A stretch of 64,000 bases of DNA from Euprymna scolopes (lineage: Eukaryota), in assembly GCA_053919585.1 (NCBI GenBank), contig CM132796.1. One strand, written 5' to 3'. The notes under the pieces were generated by a model. That model worked only from the letters and a program-made list of their open reading frames with translations, did no database searches and had not been told where the DNA came from. How positions within the stretch are numbered: the first letter of the stretch is position 1; each line of letters begins with the position of its first letter. A program made the translations under genes and the position numbers. Positions 45,820-46,135 of this stretch are shown here, in pieces.

Positions 45820-46132
45820 ATATATTTAAGCCCTCCCTCTTTGGGTAGAGCACGGTCGTAAATACTCTCACCCGCTACTTAATTGGGTGAAAAATGCGAA
45901 GCTCGTTGTTTGTTTACAAACAGGCGGTTTGAGCACTGTAAGAGTGGTGGCGGATGTCTATTTAAATAGACATTCCGACGAGTTATTTGCGGGTGTCCCT
46001 TCTGTGGTCGAGTGGGAGAACTGCCGCCTGTCAACACGACGTTTCTAGGTTCAATTTTTTGCTTGGAGAGATGCTAGTCTAGCGGCACTGATGAGTTGTG
46101 ATACAACGAAACAGGACTGTATGTCGATGACT

Positions 46133-46135
<3 letters not shown>
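45820..46135 (+). mobile_element. Candidate hammerhead-containing non-autonomous element (retrozyme-like monomer)
   Basis: Non-coding segment, GC-richer than its flanks, with several inverted repeats. Ends in a hammerhead ribozyme; bounded by an N-gap upstream and (TA)n downstream. Confidence 0.55.
46075..46133 (+). ncRNA. Type I hammerhead ribozyme
   Basis: Stem I UAGUC/GACUA plus CGGCA/UGUCG around an internal loop. Core CUGAUGA at 46088-46094. Stem II GUUGU/ACAAC. GAAA at 46108-46111. Stem III CA(G)/(C)UG. Cleavage triplet GUA at 46119-46121. Confidence 0.9.

What the first reader, a model, noticed from the sequence alone, without database searches (positions are those of the whole stretch)
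46075..46133. Apparently intact type I hammerhead ribozyme
All catalytic core nucleotides are present: CUGAUGA, G-C closing pair of stem II (G46095-C46107), GAAA, C46112-G46119 pair and GUA triplet, with predicted cleavage after A46121. Stem I is extended (5+5 bp around a UAG/AU internal loop), which could contact loop II as in fast natural hammerheads. Stem III (CAG-GA-CUG) is short and nearly self-complementary, compatible with cleavage as a dimer. Its intactness contrasts with the decayed elements around it, suggesting recent insertion or selection.
Basis: partly seen in the sequence, partly recalled or inferred. Interest (0 to 1): 0.85.

Follow-up and report, generated by a model that had tools for sequence, protein, structure and literature searches.

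The report
Hammerhead ribozyme in a retrozyme copy
The motif is a real, letter-perfect type I hammerhead ribozyme, but it is simply the 3' end of one ordinary copy of a young, non-coding mobile repeat (an animal "retrozyme") present in thousands of copies in this 5.9-Gb mollusc genome; this is a known kind of element, and self-cutting was not shown here.

Summary
All 13 core nucleotides, three helices and a GUA triplet are present, with predicted cleavage after A46121.

The motif is not a lone ribozyme. It ends a ~316-bp non-coding unit (45821-46136) that abuts a (TA)22 run.
- The 38-nt core occurs 3,252 times exactly in the genome; the reversed control gives 0.
- Copies share a fixed 3' end and have variable 5' truncation.
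- One third are "partial + full" tandems.
- 73% have (TA)n directly 3'.

These are insertion scars of Penelope-like retrotransposition and fit metazoan non-LTR retrozymes and the schistosome Sm-alpha design. About two thirds of unselected copies are equally intact, so no locus-level selection is needed.

Evidence for function:
- The core is shared by subfamilies that are only 83-85% identical elsewhere.
- A diverged sister family keeps stem I through a G-C to C-G swap.

Evidence against, or missing:
- No Rfam hit reaches the gathering score.
- Helix III is unstable as a hairpin but stable as a duplex, which suggests a dimer mode.
- PolyA RNA-seq shows transcription but no read ends at the cleavage site.

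The scan has noted this family many times elsewhere in this genome. Verdict: a new member of a known kind, of low to moderate interest.

The parts
45821..46136 (+). One full-length unit (~316 bp) of the repeat family (a non-LTR retrozyme). It begins TATATTTAAGCC and ends GACTACAA.
   Evidence: BLAST of the unit against 100 other genomic loci shows alignments spanning unit positions 1-316, with a tandem period of ~321-328 bp. No ORF of 150 aa or more is present.
46000..46069 (+). Degenerate tRNA-like module just upstream of the ribozyme. It holds a box A-like TGGTCGAGTGG at 46005-46015. The box B-like site at 46048-46058 reads GGTTCAATTTT in this copy and GGTTCAATCCT in the family majority.
   Evidence: Relaxed ARAGORN (threshold 80%) calls a tRNA-like fold at this position in 33 of 42 units, against 0.16 hits per shuffled unit. 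Default ARAGORN and the Rfam tRNA model do not find it. This is suggestive only.
46075..46133 (+). Type I hammerhead ribozyme motif, complete.
   Evidence: Read directly from the sequence. It is identical to the family majority across all 59 nt. Sub-threshold Rfam hits align the core: Hammerhead_3 at 18.9-20.3 bits, and RAGATH-1-hammerhead at 11.2 bits in type I topology.
46088..46094 (+). Conserved core CUGAUGA (C3-A9).
46095..46107 (+). Helix II: 5 bp (GUUGU/ACAAC) with loop GAU.
   Evidence: This helix is also kept in the MFE fold.
46108..46121 (+). GAA core, then helix III (A-U, C-G, A-U with a GGAC tetraloop), then the cleavage triplet GUA. The predicted scissile bond lies between 46121 and 46122.
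   Evidence: Hairpin +1.3 kcal/mol against intermolecular duplex -10.3 kcal/mol.
46137..46180 (.). (AT)22 microsatellite at the 3' junction, the likely insertion target.
   Evidence: Of 107 sampled insertions, 73% have (TA)n directly 3' and 5% have (CA)n.
45643..45819 (.). Masked N run directly upstream of the unit. It was left unfilled, so it is unknown whether a partial upstream copy precedes this unit.
   Evidence: N runs listed from the window itself.

Best explanation
46075-46133 is the hammerhead ribozyme of one solitary, full-length copy of a young, high-copy, non-coding retroelement. The element is a metazoan non-LTR retrozyme with a tRNA-like piece in front of the ribozyme, resembling schistosome Sm-alpha.

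Proposed life cycle:
1. Units are transcribed. Transcription is shown for the family as a whole. The promoter is inferred: either read-through from host transcripts or internal A/B boxes.
2. In multimeric transcripts the hammerheads cut after GUA, probably most efficiently as paired 'double hammerheads' through an intermolecular helix III. This would release ~321-nt RNAs (inferred).
3. By analogy with tested retrozymes, a tRNA ligase circularises these RNAs (inferred).
4. A Penelope-like reverse transcriptase/endonuclease nicks (TA)n DNA, primes on the AUAUA at the unit junction, and copies a template that is continuous across the cleavage site. That template is either an uncleaved multimer or a religated circle.

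Step 4 would produce what the sampled insertions show: a fixed 3' end, variable 5' truncation and insertions longer than one unit. The pattern is shown here; the enzyme is inferred. The window copy is intact by recent descent, not because of selection at this locus.
For: Family size:
- 3,252 exact copies of the 38-nt core against 0 in the control.
- At least 632 to 2,497 candidates for each half of the unit.

Insertion architecture, from 107 sampled insertions:
- The 107 were chosen for a proper 3' end (alignment reaching unit position 309 or later); they end at positions 309-316, i.e. 8-15 nt past the cleavage site.
- None of these ends at the cleavage site itself.
- 49% are 5'-truncated, 19% are about one unit, and 33% are longer than one unit (partial + full, up to at least three units).
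- 73% have (TA)n directly 3'.
- These are the features given for Penelope-like elements in PMC8557442: 5' truncation, partial tandems, and a bias for microsatellites including (TA)n.

Fit to non-LTR retrozymes as described in PMC7229834:
- A type I hammerhead in short tandem units of 150-450 bp.
- GC below 50% (45%).
- No LTR or ORF.

Conservation above neutral expectation:
- The exact core 38-mer is 2.9 times more frequent than the best adjacent CpG-free 38-mer (3,252 against 1,138).
- The core is shared by subfamilies whose remaining sequence is only 83-85% identical.
- In unselected copies the hammerhead differs from the majority at 1.9-2.7% of sites, against about 6% in the adjacent unselected region.

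Sister family:
- It gives 16,183 hits within two mismatches and 49 exact 49-mers.
- It keeps CUGAUGA, GAAA and GUA.
- It has CCGCA/UGUGG where this family has CGGCA/UGUCG, a compensatory G-C to C-G swap in stem I.
- Its helix III, CAGUACUG, is perfectly palindromic.

Transcription: family reads appear in three polyA RNA-seq runs and one RNA contig set, including unit-to-unit junction reads.
Against: - No hammerhead model reaches Rfam's gathering score. Other hammerhead families in the same genome score 43-57 bits on RF00163.
- The active fold is not the predicted MFE, and helix III is unstable as a monomer.
- RNA-seq gives no pile-up of read starts or ends at the predicted cleavage sites and no dip in depth across them. 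Reads lie on both strands, and 81-86% of the reads (3% of the contigs in the fourth run) run on into unrelated sequence, as expected for passive transcription of dispersed copies. PolyA libraries are, however, poorly suited to small circles.
- There is no covariation within the family.
- The circular fold of the window unit is only modestly more stable than shuffles (z -1.6; other copies -1.7 to -3.0).
- The Penelope-like partner was not examined here.
- The window copy is a single unit, its box B-like site is degraded, and its upstream side is masked.
Confidence: 0.8

Rival explanations
1. The element is a plain tRNA-derived Pol III SINE (Sm-alpha type). Each unit is transcribed on its own from internal A/B boxes. 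The hammerhead-bearing 3' tail serves mainly as the recognition or priming module for the partner reverse transcriptase. Circular RNA plays no part.
For: - A tRNA-like module with box A and box B-like sites sits about 42 nt apart just upstream of the ribozyme.
- The majority unit junction carries TTTT, a possible Pol III stop.
- Two thirds of insertions are one unit or shorter.
- A diverged family shares the same tail design.
Against: - One third of insertions exceed one unit, and tandem arrays of at least three units exist. These need multimeric or circular templates.
- The tRNA-like call is found only at relaxed thresholds.
- Reads crossing unit-to-unit junctions are common in RNA.
Confidence: 0.12
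2. The motif is a catalytically dead or never-used hammerhead look-alike, carried passively by a repeat. Its conservation only reflects the youth of the family.
For: - No Rfam hit at gathering score.
- The active fold is not the MFE, and helix III is unstable.
- No cleavage-site read ends were seen.
- Within-family mutations break pairs.
Against: - All 13 core positions and three helices are in the correct register.
- The core is kept across subfamilies that are 15% diverged elsewhere, and in a sister family that has a compensatory stem I change.
- Close structural analogues (helix III of 2 bp plus a tetraloop) cleave in vitro, best as dimers (PMC7229834).
Confidence: 0.06
3. The copies are 5'-truncated 3' ends (pseudo-LTR fragments) of a full-length autonomous Penelope-like element, not an independent short element.
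For: The copies share the fixed 3' end, the 5' truncation and the partial tandems typical of Penelope-like elements (PMC8557442).
Against: - Every sampled insertion longer than one unit continues into another copy of the same ~321-bp unit, never into coding sequence.
- Units repeat head-to-tail with a constant period.
- No ORF lies near the window copy.
Confidence: 0.02

Closest known systems
Metazoan non-LTR retrozymes (Cervera and de la Pena 2020, PMC7229834), e.g. the mussel 350-390-bp and coral 220-240-bp repeats
   Same: - A type I hammerhead in each short, AT-rich, non-coding unit.
- Head-to-tail repeats plus dispersed copies, numbering in the thousands.
- The host is a mollusc.
- The family is transcribed.
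   Different: - The unit sequence is unrelated to those families.
- Circular RNA and cleavage were not shown here.
- Most copies are solitary or 5'-truncated rather than in long arrays.
- There is a clear (TA)n target and a tRNA-like piece, neither of which is mentioned in that paper.
Schistosome Sm-alpha / Sj-alpha SINE-like elements with a hammerhead (Ferbeyre et al. 1998, from my own knowledge; cited in PMC2770079)
   Same: A ~0.3-kb SINE-like repeat that combines tRNA-gene-type promoter boxes with an active-type type I hammerhead whose stem I contains an internal loop, present at very high copy number.
   Different: - Different phylum and no sequence relation.
- The tRNA-like head here is supported only at relaxed thresholds.
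- Sm-alpha cleavage is proven experimentally; this family's is not.
Newt satellite 2 and axolotl retrozymes (HHR_Amex1 and HHR_Amex2, PMC7229834)
   Same: - Unit length of ~330-350 bp.
- A weak helix III (1-2 bp plus a tetraloop), so that efficient cleavage needs a dimeric double hammerhead.
- The sister family here even has a palindromic helix III.
   Different: - In the window's family the helix III duplex carries a tandem G.A/A.G mismatch rather than a perfect palindrome.
- The host is an invertebrate.
- Copies are dispersed in microsatellites rather than arranged in long satellite arrays.
Hammerheads in the pseudo-LTRs of Penelope-like elements, and retrozymes as their non-autonomous derivatives (PMC8557442; bioRxiv 10.64898/2026.07.22.740005)
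   Same: The insertion scars match: a fixed 3' end, 5' truncation, a partial upstream tandem copy, and a bias for microsatellites including (TA)n.
   Different: - There is no ORF.
- The partner element and any shared tail were not examined here.
- The hammerhead is canonical, not the minimal variant described for many Penelope-like elements.

Membership tests
Hammerhead ribozyme, type I | Conserved core nucleotides C3 U4 G5 A6 N7 G8 A9, G12 A13 A14, the A15.1-U16.1 pair, and H17 (any base but G) | tested here: met
   CUGAUGA at 46088-94, GAA at 46108-10, A46111-U46120, and A46121.
Hammerhead ribozyme, type I | Three helices around the core, with helix I open and helices II and III capped by loops | tested here: met
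   Helix I has 5+5 bp and is open-ended. Helix II has 5 bp plus GAU. Helix III has 3 bp (counting 15.1-16.1) plus GGAC. Helix III is computed as unstable on its own, at +1.3 kcal/mol.
Hammerhead ribozyme, type I | A score at or above the gathering score of Rfam RF00163 (34 bits) or another model in the hammerhead clan | tested here: not met
   There is no hit at gathering score. The best clan hit is Hammerhead_3 at 18.9-20.3 bits against a cut-off of 48.5. Other families in the same genome reach 43-57 bits on RF00163.
Hammerhead ribozyme, type I | Pairing supported by covariation | tested here: inconclusive
   Within the family there is none, and 121 copies mostly show broken pairs. Between this family and the sister family there is one compensatory swap in stem I, at the pair 46084/46125 (G-C to C-G).
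Hammerhead ribozyme, type I | Site-specific, Mg2+-dependent self-cleavage giving 2',3'-cyclic phosphate and 5'-OH ends | not testable with these tools
   PolyA RNA-seq showed no excess of read ends at the predicted site. That is weak negative evidence only.
Metazoan non-LTR retrozyme | Short (about 150-450 bp), non-coding, AT-rich unit with a type I hammerhead, found head-to-tail in the genome | tested here: met
   The unit is ~316-321 bp with 45% GC. Tandem periods are 321-328 bp. Dimers, trimers and partial + full copies occur. The window copy itself is a single unit with a masked upstream side.
Metazoan non-LTR retrozyme | No LTR, primer-binding site, polypurine tract or ORF | tested here: met
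   No ORF of 150 aa or more lies near the element. Copies are bounded by microsatellite sequence, not by LTRs.
Metazoan non-LTR retrozyme | Expressed as unit-length linear and circular RNA | tested here: inconclusive
   Family reads and unit-to-unit junction reads are present in RNA runs. They lie on both strands, mostly run into flanking sequence, and junction reads cannot distinguish circles from tandem DNA copies.
Metazoan non-LTR retrozyme | Retrotransposition signature and co-occurrence with Penelope-like elements | tested here: inconclusive
   The signature is met: fixed 3' end, 5' truncation, partial tandems and a (TA)n target. The presence of a partner Penelope-like element was not tested here and is only claimed in earlier notes from this scan.
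tRNA-derived SINE (Sm-alpha-like) | A tRNA-related head with Pol III box A and box B | tested here: inconclusive
   Box A-like TGGTCGAGTGG and box B-like GGTTCAATCC lie about 42 nt apart. Relaxed ARAGORN finds the module in 33 of 42 units, against 0.16 hits per shuffled unit. Default ARAGORN and the Rfam tRNA model find nothing.

The most novel reading that the evidence does not exclude
The thousands of insertions may record the mobilisation mechanism itself. Every sampled 3' end lies 8-15 nt past the cleavage site, and a third of insertions exceed one unit. The reverse-transcribed template would therefore have been a religated circular RNA (or an uncleaved multimer) primed on (TA)n DNA. In that reading, a Pol III-headed retrozyme with a dimeric hammerhead in a cephalopod-like mollusc replicates by rolling-circle reverse transcription using a Penelope-like enzyme.
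Probability: 0.3. Interest if true: 0.5.

Novelty: new member of a known kind. Interest (0 to 1): 0.3.

Why it matters
The result adds a large, young family of hammerhead retrozymes, plus at least one larger sister family and other families that Rfam does detect, to a mollusc lineage with a very large genome. In the library I searched I found no description of such elements for this lineage.

The family could serve as a natural data set for studying how such elements integrate. Its copies show a fixed 3' end beyond the cleavage site, a (TA)n target, and insertions longer than one unit.

It also shows that Rfam's hammerhead models miss a family with a perfectly canonical core. Ribozyme counts based on covariance models in such genomes are therefore underestimates. 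For the single locus in this window, nothing is special.

Tried and rejected
- **Rfam.** A gathering-threshold scan of the window gave only a 5S rRNA hit. Permissive scans gave only sub-threshold hammerhead hits.
- **tRNA detection.** Default ARAGORN on the window and on 11 loci found no tRNA.
- **RNA-seq.** It showed transcription but no ends at the cleavage site, no informative joints, and reads on both strands. It therefore neither shows nor excludes cleavage or circles.
- **Cleavage-derived 5' ends in DNA.** Three insertions (L043, L055, L087) begin exactly at UGUCGAUG, the 5' end a cleaved RNA would have. Other 5'-end hot spots are as strong or stronger, with 4-5 cases each at unit positions 39, 86, 223 and 257. 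The site also offers TA microhomology with the target. I do not count this as evidence.
- **Target-site duplications.** Shared non-repeat words in the flanks are no commoner than in shuffled pairings.
- **A first 38-mer control.** It was built from column majorities and gave only 4 hits because it was not a real haplotype. I replaced it with the commonest observed haplotype.
- **Rod-like circular fold.** The support is only modest, with z from -1.6 to -3.0.
- **Ferbeyre et al. 1998.** The paper is not held in the library.

Full report
**Observation**

The stretch 46075-46133 reads UAGUC-UAG-CGGCA-CUGAUGA-GUUGU-GAU-ACAAC-GAAA-CAGGACUG-UA-UGUCG-AU-GACUA. In standard hammerhead numbering:
- C3-A9 lies at 46088-94.
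- Helix II is closed by G10.1 (46095) and C11.1 (46107).
- G12 A13 A14 lie at 46108-10.
- The helix III pairs are A46111-U46120, C46112-G46119 and A46113-U46118, capped by GGAC.
- H17 is A46121.
- Helix I is open-ended, with 5 bp, an internal loop (UAG opposite AU), and 5 more bp.

The motif is far beyond chance. The core plus stem II has one match in the window against none in 100 shuffles. The 38-nt core has 3,252 exact matches in the genome against none for the reversed control.

Two caveats apply. Rfam reports no hammerhead at gathering score. Permissive scans give only Hammerhead_3 at 18.9-20.3 bits (cut-off 48.5), and RAGATH-1-hammerhead at 11.2 bits, which does align the type I topology correctly. 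In nearest-neighbour energies the active fold (-8.2 kcal/mol) loses to an alternative fold (-13.2), and the stretch is no more stable than shuffles, with z -0.71.

**What it belongs to**

The window is C14:137020001-137084000 of a 5.9-Gb assembly with at least 46 chromosome-scale contigs. RNA runs that hold the sequence are labelled mollusc. Size and karyotype fit a decapodiform cephalopod (PMC13218726), but I did not identify the species.

The ribozyme is the last 60 nt of a ~316-bp unit at 45821-46136. A masked N run (45643-45819) lies upstream and (AT)22 lies downstream. Both halves of the unit are highly repeated, with at least 632 and 2,497 candidates and top hits 92-96% identical.

I held 103 loci and analysed 107 insertions chosen for a proper 3' end, that is, an alignment reaching unit position 309 or later:
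- They end at unit positions 309-316 (GACTA/GACTACAA), which is 8-15 nt beyond the cleavage site. None of them ends at the cleavage site.
- 73% are followed directly by (TA)n, and 5% by (CA)n.
- 43% also have (TA)n on the 5' side.
- 49% are 5'-truncated, 19% are about one unit, and 33% are longer than one unit.
- The longer ones are always a 5'-truncated unit followed head-to-tail by full units, up to at least three, with a period of 321-328 bp.

No ORF of 150 aa or more is nearby, and unit GC is about 45%.

These features match the published definition of metazoan non-LTR retrozymes (PMC7229834). They also match the insertion scars described for Penelope-like elements in PMC8557442: frequent 5' truncation, a full copy preceded by a partial one, and a bias for microsatellites including (TA)n. 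[quoted passage not shown]

**Is the intactness special?**

No. I drew 36 ribozyme copies by similarity to the 5' half of the unit only.
- 25 have all core nucleotides without indels, and 23 of these also keep at least 16 of 17 stem pairs.
- 17 have the exact 38-mer, which suggests roughly 7,000 ribozyme-bearing copies.
- The window unit is 94.4% identical to the family majority.
- Its 59-nt ribozyme is identical to the majority.

The neighbouring 5S-like sequence belongs to an old repeat whose relatives are 75-79% identical.

**Evidence for function at the family level**

- Mutations among the 121 copies mostly break pairs, as expected for neutral decay after insertion. There is no within-family covariation.
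- The ribozyme is nonetheless better kept than its surroundings. In unselected copies it differs from the majority at 1.9-2.7% of sites, against about 6% in the adjacent unselected stretch.
- Genome-wide, the exact core 38-mer (one CpG) is 2.9 times more frequent than the commonest adjacent 38-mer with no CpG (3,252 against 1,138).
- About half of the copies drawn by exact core belong to subfamilies whose remaining sequence is only 83-86% identical to the window unit.
- A more diverged sister family of the same design (seen in L044:151-467) gives 16,183 hits within two mismatches and 49 exact 49-mers. It keeps CUGAUGA, GAAA and GUA.
- That family has CCGCA/UGUGG where this family has CGGCA/UGUCG, a compensatory G-C to C-G swap in helix I. 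Its helix III reads CAGUACUG, a perfect palindrome.

**Monomer or dimer**

Helix III alone is computed at +1.3 kcal/mol. Two copies of ACAGGACUGU pair at -10.3 kcal/mol, forming 4+4 bp around a tandem G.A/A.G. Together with the palindromic helix III of the sister family, this fits the double-hammerhead mode shown experimentally for salamander retrozymes (PMC7229834). Possible loop-loop contacts cannot be tested with these tools.

**tRNA-like head**

Just upstream of the ribozyme, at window 46000-46069, the family carries TGGTCGAGTGG (box A-like). About 42 nt further on it carries GGTTCAATCC (box B-like), which is degraded to GGTTCAATTTT in the window copy. ARAGORN at a relaxed threshold calls a tRNA-like fold there in 33 of 42 units, against 0.16 hits per shuffled unit. 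Default ARAGORN and Rfam find nothing. I treat this as a likely, degenerate tRNA-derived module. The design is known from schistosome Sm-alpha (PMC2770079; the details of Sm-alpha are from my own knowledge).

**Expression**

I laid reads on a partial + full copy (L052:1340-1880) at 90% likeness. Three polyA RNA-seq runs gave 418-503 family reads each.
- Reads lie on both strands.
- In the three read runs, 81-86% of what was laid runs on into unrelated sequence (3% in the contig run).
- Depth rises toward the 3' part of the unit, as does the DNA copy number.
- No excess of read starts or ends appears at the predicted cleavage positions, and there is no dip in depth across them.
- 21-39 reads per run continue from the end of one unit into the next, against 36-50 that continue into (TA)n.

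Transcription of family members is therefore shown. Cleavage and circles are neither shown nor excluded, because polyA libraries are unsuitable for small circles.

The circular fold of the unit is moderately more stable than shuffles: z -1.6 for the window copy, and -1.7 to -3.0 for four others.

**Mechanism**

The shown and inferred steps are set out under Best explanation. The most informative inference comes from the DNA. In the sampled insertions the 3' ends lie past the scissile bond and none lies at it, and a third exceed one unit. The reverse-transcribed template was therefore continuous across the cleavage site, either as an uncleaved multimer or as a religated circle, and priming occurred at the AUAUA of the unit junction on nicked (TA)n DNA.

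**Context from the scan**

After finishing my own analysis I looked up earlier notes. The same family has been reported many times from other windows of this genome, with 222 notes holding the words 'hammerhead retrozyme'. Their readings match mine: a 322-bp unit, a tRNA-like head, insertion into (TA)n, and an Sm-alpha-like design. Some also claim a hammerhead-bearing Penelope-like element in this genome, which I did not test.

**Verdict**

This is one ordinary copy of a new family of a known kind of element.

Noticed in passing
window 28354-28470 (+): A full-length 5S rRNA match (81.5 bits, E 9e-16). It is the only Rfam hit at gathering score in the window. It could be a gene or a 5S-derived repeat; cephalopod genomes are reported to hold tens of thousands of 5S-derived loci (PMC6962438).
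   Followed up: no
window 46173-46400 (+): Directly after the (TA)22 run lies a decayed 5S-like sequence (Rfam 22.8 bits, below threshold). It belongs to an old dispersed repeat with at least 1,800 candidates in the genome at 75-79% identity. The retrozyme sits at its 5' edge.
   Followed up: partly
L044:151-467 (genome C16, near 61427335-61427651): A diverged sister retrozyme family of the same layout. Its hammerhead has a compensatory stem I change, a C.A mismatch in helix II and a palindromic helix III. It gives 16,183 genome hits within two mismatches of a 36-mer and 49 exact 49-mers, so it is larger and older than the window's family.
   Followed up: partly
genome C8:10432194-10435515 and C3:89840417-89842627: Other type I hammerhead families score 43-57 bits on Rfam RF00163. 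They include tandem arrays with a ~410-bp period, and one array switches strand in the middle.
   Followed up: no
L043, L055, L087 (5' junctions of the insertions): Three insertions begin, right after (TA)n, exactly at UGUCGAUG, the 5' end that hammerhead cleavage would create. Other recurrent 5' ends, at unit positions 39, 86, 134, 223 and 257, are as frequent or nearly so (3-5 cases each). These hot spots are unexplained; possible causes are reverse-transcriptase pause sites, RNA breaks or microhomology.
   Followed up: partly
L086:1081-1290 (-): A rearranged copy in which the tRNA-like T-arm piece (GGTTCTAGGTTCAATCC) occurs twice before a complete hammerhead.
   Followed up: no
window 42816-43002, 45643-45819, 48043-48296, 49874-50121: Four N runs of 177-254 nt lie within 8 kb. 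One abuts the 5' end of the retrozyme unit. All were left as they are.
   Followed up: no
L052:1834-1880: The 3' flank of the locus used for laying reads belongs to another expressed repeat. It has strongly strand-biased RNA coverage (about 120 against 30) and consistent loose-end consensus sequences.
   Followed up: no
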